A stretch of 64,000 bases of DNA from Isurus oxyrinchus (lineage: Eukaryota), in contig JANJGN010000021.1 in assembly GCA_026770705.1 (NCBI GenBank), forward strand, positions 88,908,001-88,972,000, given 5' to 3'. Shown in pieces: positions 4,890 to 35,018 of the stretch (position 1 is its first letter; every line of letters begins with the position of its first letter). The notes under the pieces were generated by a model, which was given only the letters and a program-made list of their open reading frames with translations, searched no databases and was not told where the DNA came from. Position numbers and translations under genes: made by a program.

Positions 4890-5036
4890 TCAGCTGCAGT
4901 CCGCTTTCTGCGCAAAAGCATATACGGTCTCTTGAGGTTGCTCTTGTGTGAGAGGTCCTGGAGCCAGTGGGTTTCTTGGCTCAGTCCAATGTAGAAGGGA
5001 GTATACGGGCTCACTGTTCGATGTCGGTTCCTCATT
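4890..5036 (-). CDS. Single-IgV receptor gene, exon 5 (last coding): tail with two tyrosine motifs (NEEPTSNSEPVYSLLHWTEPRNPLAPGPLTQEQPQETVYAFAQKADCS*)
   Basis: Acceptor TCTTTTCTGTTCTGTGCAG, phase 0, 48 codons then TGA at 4892-4890. Contains YxxL and TxY motifs typical of immunoreceptor tails. Confidence 0.87.
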   Translation of the reverse strand, partial: NEEPTSNSEPVYSLLHWTEPRNPLAPGPLTQEQPQETVYAFAQKADCS

Positions 5037-6129
5037 CTGCACAGAACAGAAAAGACTAGCTTTCAACAAATGTGAAAAATTTTAAAAAGCTGAGAAAGAA
5101 AACCATTGAAAATACACAACGGGCCAGTCAGCATCTACAGGAAGAAAGAGAGCTCCCTATTTAAGTTAATGTTTTCTCTTTCAGAAACTCTAATGTGGAA
5201 ACCTTTACGATGAGCATATGTGAAATGGCACAGCCTTTGGCTGCCTGTGCCTGTAAGGAACATTTGGGTCAGCACAAGGCCATTCAGCCCCAGGGTCTGC
5301 TCTCCCATTCAGTGAGATGGCTAATCTGTACTTCAACTCCATTTACCTGCCTTTGCTCCATATTCCTCCATAACCTTACACAACAAAGATCCCTCCATCT
5401 CAGTCTTGAAAACCCCAATTGACCTCAGCATCCTGTTTTACAAAGACTTTGGCTGAGATAAATATTGGCCAGGTCACTGGGTAGAACTGCCCTGCTCTTT
5501 TTCAAAGTAGTGCTATTGTAAAACAGGTTACTTGCTCATTATCATATTGAAGCTTGCTTTGCATCAATTGGTTGCTGCGTTTCCTACATTACAACAGTGA
5601 ACATACTGTAACTCCTGACACTGCTTGAAAGTCTTATTTGCACCTGCACAAAGAAGGTGGTGATATCATCAAATAGTATCAGAGTTACAAGCTCATTCTC
5701 AATAGGGATCAGTTAACAGAAACATTTGCTATTCAAAGCTTTCTGTCAGAACAAAGACCATTAGGCAGCTTCCATGATGAGACAGTGCGGGGGAAGCTCA
5801 CGTCACACCTCCAAAAGTAACGCAGGAGATTCTTCAAGCAACTGCAATAGCCTGCTGAAAGCAGATATAGGGAGTCGGAATAAGGATCTGCAATTGGAGA
5901 TAGAGCGAGATTTTTTTTTAGTTAGAGAAATTGAAAGTCTAAGAGGGAGTTGAGGTCTGTCCTTGCCGGCACCAGTTTCAAGATTAATTTGGTTTCATTC
6001 CAAAATTTGTTTGCTATTGGTTTTTAAATAGCTTCCTTACTTCATTATTTATTTTTAAATGTAATTCCAGTGCACTTTTATGTCTTCCAGTAGTGCCATT
6101 CAGAATCACTGAATTAGAAATCCAGAGAC

Positions 6130-6224
6130 AAAAACACCTGGAAAAACTCAGCAGGTGCTGAGTTTTTCCAGGTATTTTTGTTTTTGTTTCTGATTTCCAT
6201 CATCCGCAGTATTTTGCTTTTATT
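6130..6224. mobile_element. Short fold-back Penelope-derived insertion inside a SINE
   Basis: Hairpin CCTGGAAAAACTCAGCA-GG-TGCTGAGTTTTTCCAGG. 16-bp TSD TTAG(A/T)AATCCAGAGAC at 6114-6129 and 6225-6240. Confidence 0.75.
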
Positions 6225-6466
6225 TTAGTAATCCAGAGACTCTGGCTAATAATCTCAGGGCACTGGTTCAATTCCTGCCACATTAGCTGGTGAAATTTAA
6301 ATTCAGTTTATTAATAAATTATTCAGGCAGCCTTTGTTCCCTCTCTGAGAGATAGATGGATGTAATATTAAGAAACCAATACCTTCAAGAGAAAATTGTA
6401 TAAAATTGACAAGCAAAACAAATTTTGCAAAAAGTAAATATTCGTGATGCATCAGATCTAATACTG

Positions 6467-7371
6467 TGTTACAAAAGTATAATAATTTTCATAATATTAT
6501 GCTGGTTTATTATAAAGTAGGTTATGGGTGTGAGTGTAGATGGTTCTGTCTGTGTGAGTTAATTACTTTGGAGTCTGGTAGATTGCAAGCTTGAAATTAT
6601 CTAAAGAAGTTAGGTGTAGAAGTGCACTTGAAATGCTGATGAGTAAACATGGATGCTGTCTTAGCAAATAAGGTGTGGTGGAAGTTTCCATCTTTAGACA
6701 AGTGAAGGAGTTGTTTGGATTTCAAAAGGATATTAGGATGTTTACAACTTGCCAGATAAGCAAGGCCAAGCTGTGTGTTTATTTTTCCCAAAGGTTACTG
6801 ACAATATTGGCAACATGAAAGTTTTTATACTATGGGAACAGTGCATTTCCAAAGACATATGGAACAAAGGAATTTACAGATTTGAGAGAGAGAAACATAT
6901 GTAAAAGAGGATGAAAGGCTATGTTGTGGGGGGTGGCATGTAAGATCTATCAGGAATATGTGAAACAGCCTTTGGGAAGCCTCCTGCTATTTATGCCAGT
7001 AAAGTTGGAGAAAAGCCTTTAGGAATTCCACTGTCAAGTGGATACTGTGGTAACTTGCTGGCTTGCTCTTTAAACTTAAAATCTATTTTTGACTGTTGCC
7101 TTAAAGAGGGTGTGTAATTGGGAGTCAGGTTAGTTAGGAACTTTAGGATGTGTTATAGTATTAACTAATTGTAGTCTTATGCATGTGCTTAAAATCTTTT
7201 CTTTTGTTAATAAATACTTTAATTTTTAAATCTCTGAAGGTGGACTCAGTACTTCTGAATTCAGTGCACACATCTCATAATAAGTGCAAATTGCAAAACT
7301 GTTGTGACAGCGGGCCACGTTTCCTTGTGGATTTGGTCCACCTGGCACACAGCACCTGCCACGTCATAACA
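6467..7371 (+). mobile_element. Solo LTR in intron 4 of the receptor gene
   Basis: TGTTA...TAACA termini, flanks ACTG/TCTG (4-bp TSD, one mismatch), AATAAA near 7209, about 905 bp. Confidence 0.6.
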
Positions 7372-7457
7372 TCTGTGACGACAATCGGCAAAATTTATGT
7401 TGCCTATTTTTTTTTTTGGTAAGAATCTCGACTCATGATAACCCATTCCCTTCTTAC

Positions 7458-32617: not shown

Positions 32618-32775
32618 TAAATAAAAGCCTGCAGATGCTGGAAATCTAAAATAAAAACATCAAGTTCTAGAAACACTCAGCAGGTCTGGCAGCATCTTGT
32701 GGGGAGAGAAGCAGAGTTAAAATTTCTAGCCAAATATGACTCTTCAGTTCTGAAGTAGAGTCACATTTGACCTCA
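32618..32775. mobile_element. Older Penelope terminal-repeat fragment (similar fragments near 1670-1730, 5095-5190, 11700-11774/16257-16285, 51180-51285, 54590-54730, 55300-55440, 61722-61810)
   Basis: Shares the GATGCTGGAAATCT...CTCAGCAGGTCTGGCAGCATC motif. TSDs not clear. Confidence 0.6.
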
Positions 32776-33289
32776 ATTTATATGACTCCTCTCACATTCT
32801 CAGGATAGGCCAACTCCCATTAATTTGGGGTCACAAAATACCTGCATTTTCAAAGAGTAAGGCTGTGAGAATTTACACTTAGATGCTTTTATTTCCTTTG
32901 TGTGCACCAAAAGTTTTTGTCTACAGAACAACAATGACTGCACTTCAGAAATGGTAATTGTAGCAAATACCACAAGCAGCTTCTCCACAAACTACAAATA
33001 AAAAAAACCTTGCATTTATACAATGCCTTACAGAACTCCAAGATGTTCAAAAGTGCTTTACAGCCAATAAAACAATCTTTGAAGTGCACTCACTGTTGTC
33101 ATTGTAGGAAATCCATCAGTCAATTTACATGCAGTAAGATCCCACAGTTAGGAATGTTGGCTGAGAGATAATTGGGGTGTTTAAAACCGTAAAGCGATTG
33201 GTAGAGAAATTATTTCCCCTGGTGAGGGCTATCAGTGAAATCTCCCCGGCACTTGAACCTGGCTGGTTTCCAATATTTTACACACCATA

Positions 33290-33750
33290 AGCTTGAGGTC
33301 ATCCAAAACTCTGCTGCCTCTGTCTTAACTTCCAACGAGTCTGGTTCCCCTTTTACCCCTGTTCTCGCTGATCTGTATTGGCTCCCAGTCAAGAGATTTT
33401 AAAACTCTCATCCTTGTTTTCAAATCCCTCCATGGCCTTGCCCCTCCCTATCTGTGTAACGTCCTCCAGCTCCACAATCCTGCGCTCCTCTAACTCTGGC
33501 CCCTTGTGTATCCCCAATTATAATTGCCTCACCAGCCTCAGTTGCCTTAGCTCCAAGCTTTGGAATTCCCTCCCTACCTCATTTTCCTTCTTTAAGACCA
33601 TTCTCAAACCATACCTATCTGACCAAGGTCATCTGACCTTATATCTCCTTATGCGGCTCAGTGTCATACTTTTTTTTATAATGCTCCTTGAGACATTTTG
33701 AGAAGTTTCATTATGTTCAGGGGGCTATATAAATATAAGTTATTTTTGTT
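33290..33750 (+). mobile_element. L2-type LINE 3' fragment (second copy at about 37670-38150)
   Basis: LEVIQNSAA...PFTPVLADL.WLPV-like RT tail and TGGAATTCCCTCCC motif. Confidence 0.65.
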
Positions 33751-34945
33751 GCACTTCAGATATTGACATAGGATCTTTTGCATTCATGTGAAAGAGCAGT
33801 CCAGGCCTTGGTTTGACATCTTGTGCAAAAGATGATGCAGAACTGAAGTGTCAGTCTAGGTTTTGTGCTGGAGTCCTGGAGTGAGACTTGTCAGAGACAA
33901 ATGTATTATCAACTAAAAAAAATCTAAGTGACCTCCTTGACTTTCCTAGATGTTGGCTCGGATACTGCAAAATCCTCGGCTTTATTTCTGAATATTTCCT
34001 CAGGATTGGTTCTTAGCTCCACTTGAAGAGATAGAGGAAGCCTCCGCATTGTAGCAATCCCTCAGTGCTGAAACATCAGCCTAGATCGTGTGATCAAATC
34101 CCGAGTGAATCCATTGCAGACTGGCACATTCCAAGGTCCAGGACTACATGCTGAGGGATGCACTAAAGCTGCCACAGAGGTGCAATGGGGAAAAGGTCAC
34201 TTTCAGCTAACATACACTGAGGGGGGTGGGGGGGGGGGGGCGGAAGGGGGGTGAAAAATGTGCATGCCTGACATTATAAATATCAAGAGTACTGAAATTG
34301 TATTAAGGGACCCCGACGAGGAACATGCTGTGTGGAGAAGAGTTGAATTCAATTGCAGCTCCTGTAATTTTTCAATTTGAAATGTTTTTGCCCTCAGGCT
34401 GCATGCCTGACATGAAATGTGCACTGTGAATATCAAGAGTAATACAATCATATAGAGGCACATAGGAATGGAGCATGCTATGCGGAGACAAATTGAATTT
34501 GATTGCACTTATCTGCAATTTTCAAGTGGAAATGCTTTGTAAATGTACTTATGTAAATGTTATGAAGAAAGTACATCTTTGCGAAAAGAATCCACAGTCT
34601 TCCTAGGTAAAGCCAATTCTTCCAACTGATCCAAGTTGACATTTTATACAACACAAGAACATCTGACACATCATTAAAGGTCAGTTAAATTATTGTTAAA
34701 TCCCAGCCATAGTTAGAGGTTTAGGTGAGACACAGTGTCGAACGCTAACTTGAAGGCAGATAGTGACGGGGAATCTCCCTTGATCACGGACTGAATGAGA
34801 ATGAAGATGTGAAGAATCAGTTGAGTTTCATTCGCTGAAAATCAGTGAGCGATGGAACCCCAGCATCAGGTCAACACAGTTACACAGGCTGGCAACCCAG
34901 AAATAGCACATTTACAGTAACTGTTGTGAAAGAAACTTAACTTAC

Positions 34946-35018
34946 CGGAGAGGGAAATGAAGTAGCTGGAGAGGAGGAAAATATTGGTGAATTGAAAGCG
35001 ATGTATAGCCCTGCACAT
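34946..35018 (-). CDS. Single-IgV receptor gene, coding exon 1 (signal peptide MCRAIHRFQFTNIFLLSSYFISLS)
   Basis: ATG at 35018 has A at -3 and lies in a CpG-rich patch. 24 codons with a hydrophobic core plus 1 nt, then G|GTAAG donor (phase 1) matching the phase-1 acceptor of the V exon. Confidence 0.85.

What the first reader, a model, noticed from the sequence alone, without database searches (positions are those of the whole stretch)
4890..35018. Complete 5-exon gene for an unassigned single-IgV immunoreceptor (283 aa), mostly invisible to the ORF track
Seen: five minus-strand exons with canonical splice sites and matching phases (1,1,1,0) join into an uninterrupted 852-nt CDS encoding leader, IgV, stalk+TM, short tail and tyrosine-motif tail. 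There are seven N-glycosylation sequons and no charged TM residue. Established: the disulfide-less V domain is of CD2/SLAM/CEACAM-N/HEPACAM/VSTM5 type, SLAM and HEPACAM normally add a C2 domain, and this 5-exon layout is also that of PD-1. Inference: a lineage-specific inhibitory or checkpoint-like receptor combining a CEACAM/SLAM-type V domain with PD-1-like architecture.
Basis: partly seen in the sequence, partly recalled or inferred. Interest (0 to 1): 0.82.

Follow-up and report, generated by a model that had tools for sequence, protein, structure and literature searches.

The report
Shark single-V ITIM-type receptor gene
This is a real, intact five-exon shark gene for a small cell-surface protein with one antibody-like domain and a tyrosine-motif tail. 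It is not a one-lineage novelty: the great white shark counterpart is already in RefSeq as an "uncharacterized protein", and its unnamed family extends to rays, frogs, turtles and birds.

Summary
Five minus-strand exons (35018-34946, 26458-26066, 8893-8735, 7537-7458, 5036-4890) have canonical GT/AG sites and phases 1,1,1,0, and they add up to 852 nt. Exon 2 is a V-set Ig domain (Pfam E 1.3e-9; AF2 pLDDT 91). It lacks the B/F cysteines but has an invariant cysteine pair across the C'-C'' hairpin.

All five exons are colinear with RefSeq "uncharacterized protein LOC121291131" of Carcharodon carcharias (283 aa, about 91% identical). Assembled contigs that look like transcripts, from three studies of a species carrying that protein's variants, join exons 3-4-5 exactly at the predicted sites. 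The runs' RNA label is a guess.

- The gene is not lineage-specific. Orthologues occur in about 20 sharks and rays, and relatives in birds, turtles and amphibians.
- "PD-1-like architecture" is generic.
- No named family (CEACAM, HEPACAM, SLAM/CD2, VSTM5) is clearly closest.

Most likely it is the inhibitory member of a paired-receptor family. In catshark and epaulette shark, paralogues keep about 93% identical V domains but have an Arg-containing TM and no tyrosine tail.

Two oddities stand out. This species has Pro at Y-2 of the otherwise conserved ITIM. The V domain has changed about 2.6 times faster than the introns.

Verdict: new member of a known kind, modest interest.

The parts
34946..35018 (-). 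Exon 1: start codon (35018-35016) and 24 codons plus 1 nt of the signal peptide; donor GTAAGT.
   Evidence: It is 24/24 identical to P0157. The leader motif (QFTNIFL..SYFIS.SASGS) is also conserved in Heterodontus and Heptranchias.
26066..26458 (-). Exon 2: end of the leader plus the V-set Ig domain (130 full codons). It has no B/F cysteines and six N-glycosylation sequons.
   Evidence: Pfam PF07686, E 1.3e-9, 38.6 bits against a cut-off of 26. AF2 model pLDDT 91, pTM 0.84. VIA Z 16.5 to VCBP3 V domains. 113/130 identical to P0157.
26250..26285 (-). Family-specific cysteine pair, C58 (26285-26283) and C69 (26252-26250), facing each other across the C'-C'' hairpin.
   Evidence: Both are invariant in all 29 aligned shark, ray, bird and turtle sequences. 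In the AF2 model, strands 49-60 and 67-75 form a hairpin whose register pairs residues 58 and 69. The disulfide itself is inferred.
8735..8893 (-). Exon 3: Ser/Thr/Pro-rich stalk (one sequon), an uncharged transmembrane segment and the KQYR stop-transfer.
   Evidence: 49/52 identical to P0157. It is present in spliced contigs of X2, X3 and X4.
7458..7537 (-). Exon 4: 80-nt membrane-proximal cytoplasmic exon (conserved QQDSV.ME...QPI.G..QDLAE segment). Its length is 2 mod 3. Skipping it would read GAA then TGA, giving a tail-less product.
   Evidence: Joints 7537|8735 and 5036|7458 are seen in contigs of three runs. The skipped form is an inference and was not observed.
4890..5036 (-). Exon 5: 48 codons plus TGA, carrying both tyrosine motifs.
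   Evidence: 46/48 identical to P0157. Spliced contigs.
4992..5012 (-). Tyrosine motif 1 (E-P-V-Y-S-L-L). It reads [LIV]-x-Y-x-x-[LI], an ITIM, in almost all orthologues seen in full; two rays have Thr at Y-2 instead. Here Y-2 is Pro.
   Evidence: Alignment and sequences. Carcharodon and Cetorhinus have E-L-V-Y-S-L-L.
4911..4931 (-). Tyrosine motif 2 near the C-terminus (E-T-V-Y-A-F-A-Q-K). It is conserved as x-[IV]-Y-x-x-[APSV]-x-K and is not a canonical ITIM or ITSM.
3984..4889 (-). 3' UTR, at least 906 nt, running into a highly repeated element.
   Evidence: Contig X2 record 11 runs 5036 to 3984 in one piece after the spliced exons.
5037..7457 (-). Intron 4 (2421 nt, GT..AG).
   Evidence: Joint 5036|7458 in X2, X3 and X4.
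7538..8734 (-). Intron 3 (1197 nt, GT..AG).
   Evidence: Joint 7535(+2)|8733(+2) in X2, X3 and X4.
8894..26065 (-). Intron 2 (17.2 kb), full of repeats and LINE or Penelope-like fragments; no Ig exon was found in it.
   Evidence: tblastn with 11 family proteins, including multi-V ones, finds no second Ig block. Sixteen minus-strand ORFs of 92-166 aa in this intron (the proline-rich low-complexity ones were not scanned) give no Ig family in Pfam.
26459..34945 (-). Intron 1 (8.5 kb).
   Evidence: It was not tested with reads.

Best explanation
The locus is an intact gene for a 283-aa type I membrane glycoprotein. It is the orthologue of Carcharodon carcharias LOC121291131, in another lamniform shark.

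The product has:
- a signal peptide;
- one V-set Ig domain without the canonical B-F disulfide, but with a family-invariant cysteine pair bridging the C'-C'' hairpin;
- a glycosylated Ser/Thr/Pro stalk;
- an uncharged TM helix;
- a cytoplasmic tail of about 80 aa.

The gene belongs to an unnamed V-set family that annotation pipelines variously label 'uncharacterized', 'HEPACAM-like' or 'CEACAM3-like'. The family is present throughout elasmobranchs and has relatives in amphibians, turtles and birds.

Most likely mechanism (inferred):
- The V domain binds a ligand through its C-C'-C''-F-G face, where most of the differences between species lie.
- On engagement, the membrane-distal tyrosines are phosphorylated by Src-family kinases.
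- The first motif, an ITIM in the orthologues, recruits SHP-1/SHP-2-type phosphatases and damps activation.
- The gene would thus be the inhibitory half of a paired-receptor system. The activating halves, seen in other sharks and a skate, share a nearly identical V domain but carry an Arg in the TM and lack the tyrosine tail.

Shown: the gene structure, the fold, orthology, splicing of exons 3-5 in the sister species, and the existence of Arg-TM paralogues elsewhere.
Inferred: the disulfide, the ligand face, phosphatase recruitment, and the pairing in this species.

My confidence by claim: a real, intact gene that is this orthologue, about 0.9; an inhibitory paired-receptor role, about 0.5.
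For: Gene structure and splice sites.

V-set domain: Pfam E 1.3e-9, above the cut-off. AF2 pLDDT 91. Z 14.5-16.5 to many V domains.

Orthology:
- P0157 (283 aa) is colinear with all five exons. Per-exon identity is 24/24, 113/130, 49/52, 24/26 and 46/48, and the split-codon residues match.
- Named orthologues occur in Cetorhinus, Mustelus, Scyliorhinus, Heterodontus, Heptranchias, Hemiscyllium, Stegostoma, Chiloscyllium, Pristis, Mobula, Narcine, Rhinoraja, Amblyraja and Hypanus.

Transcription:
- One contig in each of X2, X3 and X4 (three studies) joins 8735|7537 and 7458|5036 and continues at least 906 nt into the 3' UTR. Its depth is 656 in X2.
- Those contigs carry exactly P0157's residues at 8846, 8826, 8806, 7490 and 4925. 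I checked this codon by codon.

Family hallmarks: W41, C58, C69, R82, D101, G103 and Y105 are invariant in 29 sequences.

ITIM: [LIV]xYxx[LI] in almost all orthologues seen in full.

Paired partners:
- S. canicula P0003 against P0158, and Hemiscyllium P0007 against P0006, are each about 93% identical over the V domain (my count from the printed alignments). Their TM and tail regions are unrelated.
- P0003, P0007 and the skate protein P0016 have an Arg inside the TM and no tyrosine tail.
- Orthologous V domains of different species are only 58-74% identical. This contrast is the signature of paired receptors kept alike by gene conversion, as described for CEACAM1/3 (PMC5112662).

Fast V-domain change:
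- There are 17 amino-acid differences in 130 codons against P0157. Intron and UTR contigs of the same runs differ by about 2.2% (table 8).
- My arithmetic: at least 17 changes over about 296 non-synonymous sites is about 5.7%, roughly 2.6 times the intron rate. The Poisson P is about 1e-4 to 1e-3.
- The changes cluster in the C, C', C''-D and F strands and the FG loop, while the core residues are kept.
Against: - No spliced transcript was seen in the window's own species. X1 covers introns and the unspliced E5 acceptor at low depth.
- The kind of the runs (RNA) is a guess by the tool.
- E1|E2 and E2|E3 are not read-supported here.
- In this species the ITIM has Pro at Y-2, unique among the orthologues aligned. 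The second motif fits neither ITIM nor ITSM. The inhibitory output may therefore be weak or lost.
- No Arg-TM paralogue is in the window. No second C. carcharias protein appears among the homologues found. The 'paired' arrangement is therefore unproven for lamniforms.
- The rate comparison uses amino-acid differences against intron divergence, not a codon model. Gene conversion of the V exon could inflate it.
- Tissue and cell type of expression are unknown.
Confidence: 0.7

Rival explanations
1. It is a bona fide CEACAM family member, the cartilaginous-fish CEACAM1-like inhibitory founder, reduced to the N domain alone.
For: - The N-type V domain lacks the canonical disulfide.
- The best single-domain profile matches in the PDB include CEACAM6/7/8/1 N domains, through the C''-D-E-F stretch.
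- NCBI labels ray, sawshark and amphibian relatives 'CEACAM3-like'.
- The Atlas feature search lists a CEACAM19 cluster at 0.95.
- Two tyrosine motifs lie near the C-terminus. An exon of length 2 mod 3 precedes them, and skipping it would remove them, which recalls the 53-bp exon of CEACAM1 (PMC13278318).
- The literature states that CEACAMs exist in cartilaginous fish, on the basis of little skate ESTs (PMC3628338, PMC4079198).
Against: - The CEACAM matches are weak (about 20-27 bits) and no better than FAIM3, JAML or CD276.
- Structural neighbours are not CEACAMs.
- The same family has many members in chicken, ducks, geese and quail. Zimmermann and Kammerer find no intact CEACAM gene in Galloanserae (PMC13278318). 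At least the sauropsid branch therefore lies outside CEACAM as those authors define it.
- The invariant C'-C'' cysteine pair does not, as far as I recall, occur in CEACAM N domains (not tested).
- Synteny with LIPE and BCL3 could not be tested.
Confidence: 0.2
2. It is a HEPACAM- or VSTM5-like adhesion molecule acting by homophilic or heterophilic contact, not an immune inhibitory receptor.
For: - Pipelines label some members 'hepatic and glial cell adhesion molecule-like' or 'HEPACAM family member 2-like'.
- The Atlas structure search lists HEPACAM and VSTM5 clusters first, but only at TM about 0.4.
- From memory, the G-T-V-G-x-S-x-L-L and E-N-G-S-L-L-L motifs resemble the HEPACAM V domain (not tested).
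Against: - There is no C2 domain, and the tail is short rather than long as I recall HEPACAM's (recollection, not tested).
- The Pfam 2B4/VSTM5-type model did not hit.
- The conserved ITIM, the Arg-TM paralogues and the fast-evolving V face are typical of immune paired receptors, not of conserved adhesion molecules.
Confidence: 0.12
3. In this species the gene is drifting towards loss of function: the ITIM is broken and the V domain is accumulating changes under relaxed constraint.
For: - Pro at Y-2 of motif 1 occurs only here.
- In E3-E5, seven non-synonymous changes against P0157 are known and only one synonymous change was shown. One search's table lists only the best-supported differences, so other synonymous changes may be missing.
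- No spliced contig was seen in X1.
Against: - The reading frame, all eight splice sites, all fold-defining residues, the seven sequons and the TM are intact.
- The Carcharodon and Cetorhinus V domains have diverged just as much from each other (12/130). The fast change is therefore a property of the gene, not of this lineage.
Confidence: 0.08
4. It is a PD-1/CD28-family checkpoint receptor.
For: The five-exon layout of leader, V, stalk/TM and two tail exons, with two tail tyrosines. The Atlas feature list includes PDCD1, BTLA and TIGIT clusters at 0.94.
Against: - The V domain lacks the canonical B/F cysteine pair of ordinary V domains, which PD-1 has (my recollection).
- Sharks are reported to have their own PD-1 and CD28-family genes (titles and abstracts of PMC12151841 and PMC11599192, seen).
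- No named CD28-family protein appears among the best homologues listed (up to 150 per search, most of them named).
Confidence: 0.02

Closest known systems
RefSeq 'uncharacterized protein LOC121291131' (Carcharodon carcharias) and its elasmobranch orthologues (e.g. Mustelus LOC144496850, Hemiscyllium LOC132832807, S. canicula LOC119975690)
   Same: Same length (283 aa), the same five coding blocks, the same leader, V domain, TM, membrane-proximal segment and two tyrosine motifs. Overall identity is about 91% to Carcharodon.
   Different: A different species. There are 17 V-domain substitutions, and motif 1 has Pro instead of Leu at Y-2.
CEACAM1 / CEACAM19 (CEACAM family)
   Same: A V-type N domain without the canonical disulfide; single-V members exist (CEACAM19, and CEACAM3 from memory); an ITIM-type tail; a frame-shifting cytoplasmic exon; paired inhibitory and activating members with near-identical N domains; fast N-domain evolution (PMC5112662, PMC13278318).
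   Different: Only weak sequence similarity. An invariant C'-C'' cysteine pair. Relatives are present in Galloanserae, where CEACAMs are reported absent. Synteny was not tested. The activating partners use an Arg-TM rather than a cytoplasmic ITAM.
HEPACAM / HEPACAM2 and VSTM5
   Same: A disulfide-less V domain with similar strand motifs. The automatic names and the Atlas structure leads point here.
   Different: No C2 domain. The tail is short with tyrosine motifs, whereas HEPACAM's is long as I recall it. No significant tested match. The resemblance is partly from memory.
Classical paired receptors (SIRP-alpha/beta, Siglec-5/14, KIR L/S)
   Same: An ITIM member and a charged-TM member whose ligand-binding domains are kept about 93% identical within a species.
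   Different: A different Ig subfamily. Adaptor use and the ligand are unknown. The pairing was seen in catshark, epaulette shark and skate, not yet in lamniforms.
PD-1
   Same: Single V, TM, two tail tyrosines and five exons.
   Different: The V domain lacks the canonical B/F cysteine pair that PD-1 has (my recollection). There is no sequence relationship, and sharks are reported to have a true PD-1 (PMC12151841 abstract).

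Membership tests
Immunoglobulin V-set domain (PF07686) | Profile match above the curated cut-off, and a nine-strand V fold. | tested here: met
   38.6 bits against a cut-off of 26, E 1.3e-9. AF2 pLDDT 91 with A-G strands including C' and C''. Z 14.5-16.5 to V domains.
Elasmobranch LOC121291131 orthologue group (unnamed) | Colinear five-exon product with the conserved leader, the C58/C69 pair, the E-N-G-S-L-L-L...S-D-S-G-V-Y motif, the QQDSV.ME..QPI segment and two C-terminal tyrosine motifs. 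| tested here: met
   The only departure is Pro at Y-2 of motif 1.
CEACAM family | N domain without the B-F disulfide. | tested here: met
   There is no Cys at the B or F strand positions.
CEACAM family | Genomic location in the LIPE-BCL3 / CD79A-XRCC1 region. | not testable with these tools
CEACAM family | N-domain sequence closer to CEACAM N domains than to other V-sets. | tested here: inconclusive
   CEACAM7/8 at 27 bits and CEACAM6 N at 22 bits, against FAIM3 at 27.7 and JAML D1 at 23.5. Fold neighbours are not CEACAMs.
CEACAM family | Taxonomic distribution consistent with published CEACAM inventories. | tested here: not met
   Close relatives occur in chicken, duck, goose and quail. PMC13278318 reports no intact CEACAM gene in Galloanserae.
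SLAM/CD2 family | A V plus C2 ectodomain, and (for SLAMs) repeated TxYxx[VI] switch motifs. | tested here: not met
   No C2 exon. Motif 2 is T-V-Y-A-F-A and motif 1 is P-V-Y-S-L-L. The Pfam 2B4 model did not hit.
HEPACAM family | V plus C2 ectodomain with a long cytoplasmic tail (as I recall the family). | tested here: not met
   Single V, about 80-aa tail. Similarity of the V domain to true HEPACAM was not tested, because no HEPACAM sequence was available through the tools.
PD-1 / CD28 family | V domain with the canonical B-F disulfide, and family-level sequence similarity. | tested here: not met
   No B/F cysteines. No named CD28-family protein among the best homologues listed.
ITIM-bearing inhibitory receptors (functional class) | A cytoplasmic [SIVL]xYxx[IVL] motif. 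| tested here: inconclusive
   It is met in almost all orthologues seen in full (L/I/V at Y-2, L/I at Y+3). In this window Y-2 is Pro. Phosphatase binding is not testable here.
Paired receptors (functional class) | An activating counterpart with a near-identical ectodomain and a charged TM residue. | tested here: inconclusive
   It is present in S. canicula, Hemiscyllium and Leucoraja. It was not found in this window or among C. carcharias proteins.

The most novel reading that the evidence does not exclude
The gene represents an old, still unnamed gnathostome paired-receptor family. ITIM members and Arg-TM members have V domains kept alike by gene conversion and a fast-evolving ligand face. 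The family runs from elasmobranchs to amphibians, turtles and birds but is missing from mammals. It would be a CEACAM1/3- or SIRP-like arms-race system that mammalian immunology never saw. In this lamniform, the inhibitory member may have lost its canonical ITIM.
Probability: 0.35. Interest if true: 0.55.

Novelty: new member of a known kind. Interest (0 to 1): 0.3.

Why it matters
The gene itself is ordinary. It is an orthologue of RefSeq models that already exist, in a well-known class of small Ig receptors with tyrosine tails.

The modest value lies at the family level. No paper in the searchable library treats these LOC genes, and automatic names disagree between HEPACAM-like and CEACAM3-like.

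The data here suggest a conserved inhibitory/activating paired system with rapid V-domain change in cartilaginous fish. If confirmed, it would add a non-mammalian example to the question of how paired receptors arise and are maintained. It would also help delimit what really counts as a CEACAM outside mammals.

Tried and rejected
- **Joined model.** The exons were searched singly by reference, and the 91%-identical RefSeq orthologue P0157 served as the full-length proxy.
- **Synteny.** Synteny of the Carcharodon, catshark and chicken loci, and the orthologue's DNA for a codon-based dN/dS, could not be obtained.
- **Scripts.** The script machine was lost. The planned V-domain tree and the scripted rate test were not done. 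The rate estimate and Poisson figures are my hand arithmetic.
- **Reads.** I spent it on E3-E5 plus the 3' UTR, so E1|E2 and E2|E3 remain untested by reads.
- **Fold searches.** Foldseek and VIA gave only generic V-set neighbours and no family assignment.
- **PDB searches.** The single-sequence and profile searches gave weak, mixed hits.
- **Atlas.** Its searches gave leads only (VSIG10L2, TIGIT, CEACAM19, HEPACAM, VSTM5).
- **Extra Ig exon.** The search in intron 2 was negative.
- **Earlier notes.** A sequence look-up in the scan's earlier notes came back blank, which means nothing.
- **Literature.** Searches for the LOC identifiers and for elasmobranch paired V-set receptors found nothing specific.
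- **Rejected readings.** PD-1/CD28 kinship; SLAM/CD2 membership; a lineage-restricted orphan.

Full report
**Observation**

I rebuilt the model from the raw sequence. On the minus strand:
- An ATG at 35018 opens 73 nt that end at a GTAAGT donor.
- A polypyrimidine-CAG acceptor at 26458 opens a 393-nt exon ending at GTAAGA.
- The last exon starts behind ...TGTGCAG at 5036 and ends with TGA at 4890.

These three exons leave 239 nt to reach 852. I enumerated every AG..GT interval between them with the right phases. Only one pair combined a strong hydrophobic segment, good acceptors and the right total: 8893-8735 (159 nt) and 7537-7458 (80 nt). The phases are 1,1,1,0.

Each exon was searched by reference.

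**Is it a gene?**

Exon 2 matches Pfam V-set above the curated cut-off (E 1.3e-9). An AlphaFold model built on a 29-sequence alignment has pLDDT 91 and a full V-type strand set.

An exhaustive HMMER search with exon 2 found 254 proteins, 16 of them below 1e-30. Cluster look-ups and a word search with the Mustelus orthologue named them. The best full-length relatives are RefSeq 'uncharacterized protein' models of 256-305 aa from many sharks and rays. One of them is a 283-aa protein of Carcharodon carcharias, LOC121291131 (P0157).

Compared exon by exon, P0157 is 24/24, 113/130, 49/52, 24/26 and 46/48 identical to the window. The three split codons (GCC, GAG, GGT) give exactly its A, E and G. 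tblastn of P0157 and ten other family proteins against the window hits only these five blocks, in order.

The window is therefore the orthologous locus in another lamniform. It is neither Carcharodon nor Cetorhinus, whose partial protein is 118/130 identical over the V domain.

**Transcription**

In three runs from three studies (X2, X3, X4; 'organism B'), one contig each joins 8735|7537 and 7458|5036. These are the predicted sites, with GT..AG on the minus strand. The X2 contig continues to 3984, which gives a 3' UTR of at least 906 nt, and its depth in X2 is 656.

I checked the listed differences codon by codon:
- 8846 gives S to T.
- 8826 gives D to E.
- 8806 gives V to A.
- 7490 gives P to A.
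- 4925 gives V to I.

Each is the residue of P0157, so organism B is Carcharodon or something carrying the same protein.

Three cautions apply:
- The contigs stop at the E3 acceptor. One (X4 record 26) has 27 further letters that do not lie on the intron. This fits an upstream exon but does not identify it.
- X1, which is about 99.5% like the window and is presumably the window's own species, shows only low-depth, unspliced coverage.
- The tool's label 'RNA' for these runs is a guess.

Two junctions are therefore verified in the sister species. The other two rest on RefSeq colinearity and on a leader that is conserved as far as Heterodontus and Heptranchias.

**No extra Ig exon**

Multi-V relatives used as tblastn queries found no second Ig block in the window. 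Sixteen minus-strand ORFs of 92-166 aa in intron 2 gave no Ig family in Pfam; the proline-rich low-complexity ORFs were not scanned. The elasmobranch orthologue models seen in full are single-V.

**What kind of V domain is it?**

The B and F strand cysteines are absent. Instead, C58 and C69 are invariant in all 29 aligned shark, ray, bird and turtle sequences, along with W41, R82, D101, G103 and Y105. In the model these two cysteines sit opposite each other on the C'-C'' hairpin (strands 49-60 and 67-75). A hairpin disulfide is likely but inferred.

Fold searches return generic V domains: VCBP3 at Z 16.5, then VSIG4, PD-L1, MPZL1, CAR and TIGIT. None is CEACAM, CD2 or SLAM.

A family profile against PDB sequences gives only weak matches. 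CEACAM6/7/8 N domains score about 22-27 bits, level with FAIM3, JAML and CD276.

Atlas leads mention CEACAM19, HEPACAM, VSTM5 and TIGIT. Pipeline names for relatives vary between 'HEPACAM-like', 'HEPACAM2-like' and 'CEACAM3-like'.

No named family is clearly closest.

**Against filing it as a CEACAM**

The same family is abundant in chicken (LOC771657), ducks, geese, quail and pheasants. Zimmermann and Kammerer report that true bird CEACAM1 lies between LIPE and BCL3 and that no intact CEACAM gene exists in Galloanserae (PMC13278318).

The published evidence for CEACAMs in cartilaginous fish is limited to little skate ESTs (PMC3628338, PMC4079198).

From memory, the Xenopus relative P0023 lies on a chromosome-sized record whose length is that of chromosome 8. 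The Xenopus ceacam locus is on chromosome 7 (PMC5112662). I could not check this.

**Distribution**

The profile search lists elasmobranchs, many bird orders and turtles among its best 120 hits, all below 1e-54. Amphibian multi-V proteins and teleost or gar multi-V arrays follow at lower scores. No mammal appears among the proteins whose names I saw. 'Lineage-specific' is therefore wrong. One-to-one orthology outside elasmobranchs cannot be claimed either.

**The tail**

Motif 1 reads [LIV]-x-Y-x-x-[LI] in almost all orthologues seen in full. Examples are E-L-V-Y-S-L-L in Carcharodon and Cetorhinus, E-L-T-Y-S-[LF]-L in carcharhiniforms and orectolobiforms, and D-I-T-Y-T-L-L in rays. Two rays have Thr at Y-2 instead. 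Some rays duplicate the whole two-motif unit. In this window it is E-P-V-Y-S-L-L. Pro at Y-2 is unique here and outside the ITIM consensus.

Motif 2 (x-[IV]-Y-x-x-[A/P/S/V]-x-K, a few residues from the C-terminus) is conserved but is neither ITIM nor ITSM. In rays and orectolobiforms it reads Y-x-x-P.

The 80-nt exon 4 encodes a well-conserved membrane-proximal segment. Because 80 is 2 mod 3, skipping it would read GAA-TGA and give a tail-less form. That is an inference and was not observed. TM-less isoforms (E2 joined to E4) are annotated in Stegostoma, Scyliorhinus and Chiloscyllium.

**Paired partners**

S. canicula LOC119976513 (P0003) and Hemiscyllium LOC132832679 (P0007) have V domains about 93% identical to the ITIM gene of the same species (my count). 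Their TM and tail are unrelated: each has an Arg inside the TM and no tyrosine tail. The skate protein P0016 has a TM of the same kind.

Orthologous V domains between species are only 58-74% identical. High within-species and low between-species identity, combined with opposite signalling ends, is the classic paired-receptor pattern described for CEACAM1/3 and others (PMC5112662).

No such partner is in this window. No second Carcharodon protein turned up either.

**Rate of change**

Contigs of organism B on introns and the 3' UTR differ from the window by about 2.2% (for example 28/1294 and 25/1053, table 8). The V exon shows 17 amino-acid differences in 130 codons.

That is at least 17 changes over roughly 296 non-synonymous sites, or about 5.7%. 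This is about 2.6 times the intron rate. By my hand calculation, the Poisson P is about 1e-4 to 1e-3.

The differences lie in the C strand, the C-C' loop, the C' strand, the C''-D region, the F strand and the FG loop. All core residues are kept. Carcharodon and Cetorhinus differ from each other to a similar degree (12/130).

This suggests diversifying selection on the ligand face, but it is not a codon-model test. The script machine was lost before I could do more.

**Verdict**

It is not an orphan, not PD-1-like in any informative sense, and not demonstrably CEACAM- or SLAM-type.

It is the lamniform orthologue of an already annotated but unnamed elasmobranch gene. Most plausibly it is the inhibitory member of a paired V-set receptor family with relatives in amphibians and sauropsids. 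The degenerate ITIM in this species and the fast-evolving V face are the points worth following up.

Another (s1-871659) reports a related-looking Ig gene 390 kb away, which I did not test.

Noticed in passing
window 4992-5012 (-): Motif 1 has Pro at Y-2 (E-P-V-Y-S-L-L). Carcharodon, Cetorhinus and every other orthologue aligned have Leu, Ile, Val or Thr there. This could be a species-specific weakening of the ITIM, a polymorphism or an assembly error.
   Followed up: partly
window 7458-7537 (-): Exon 4 is 80 nt long (2 mod 3). Splicing E3 directly to E5 would read GAA then TGA, giving a tail-less isoform by the same logic as the 53-bp exon of CEACAM1. No such contig was seen.
   Followed up: partly
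window 34937-35095 (-): An upstream ATG at 35095 opens a 52-codon ORF in another frame that overlaps the main start codon. It could be a uORF if the 5' UTR reaches that far. The transcription start is unknown.
   Followed up: no
window 24451-24948 (-), 21870-22328 (-), 44144-44875 (-), 45914-46264 (-): LINE fragments: an endonuclease-reverse-transcriptase domain (Pfam PF14529, E 9e-7) in intron 2; a GDSL-esterase-like ORF (E 4e-6, below the cut-off) upstream of the gene; and ORFs that look like reverse-transcriptase pieces.
   Followed up: partly
window 10057-10803 (+): A 248-aa ORF in intron 2 has a weak GIY-YIG match (E 0.036). It looks like the endonuclease end of a Penelope-like element.
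   Followed up: partly
window 3397-4184 and 6155-6351: Very high contig depth in all four runs (thousands to tens of thousands) with many joints and loose ends. These are abundant, transcribed or high-copy repeats flanking the 3' UTR and inside intron 4.
   Followed up: no
window 25288-26033 and 26583-26906: Long proline-rich or Gly-rich low-complexity ORFs on both strands, and CA/GT microsatellites, directly flank the V exon.
   Followed up: no
related proteins P0003, P0007, P0016 (S. canicula, Hemiscyllium, Leucoraja): Paralogues with near-identical V domains but an Arg in the TM and no tyrosine tail. They are candidate activating partners.
   Followed up: partly
related proteins P0167, P0151, P0170 (Mobula, Rhinoraja): Ray orthologues carry a tandem duplication of the whole two-tyrosine tail unit, giving four motifs.
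   Followed up: no
This may be a neighbouring branch of the same V family, since the stork protein P0173 is my top profile hit.
   Followed up: no
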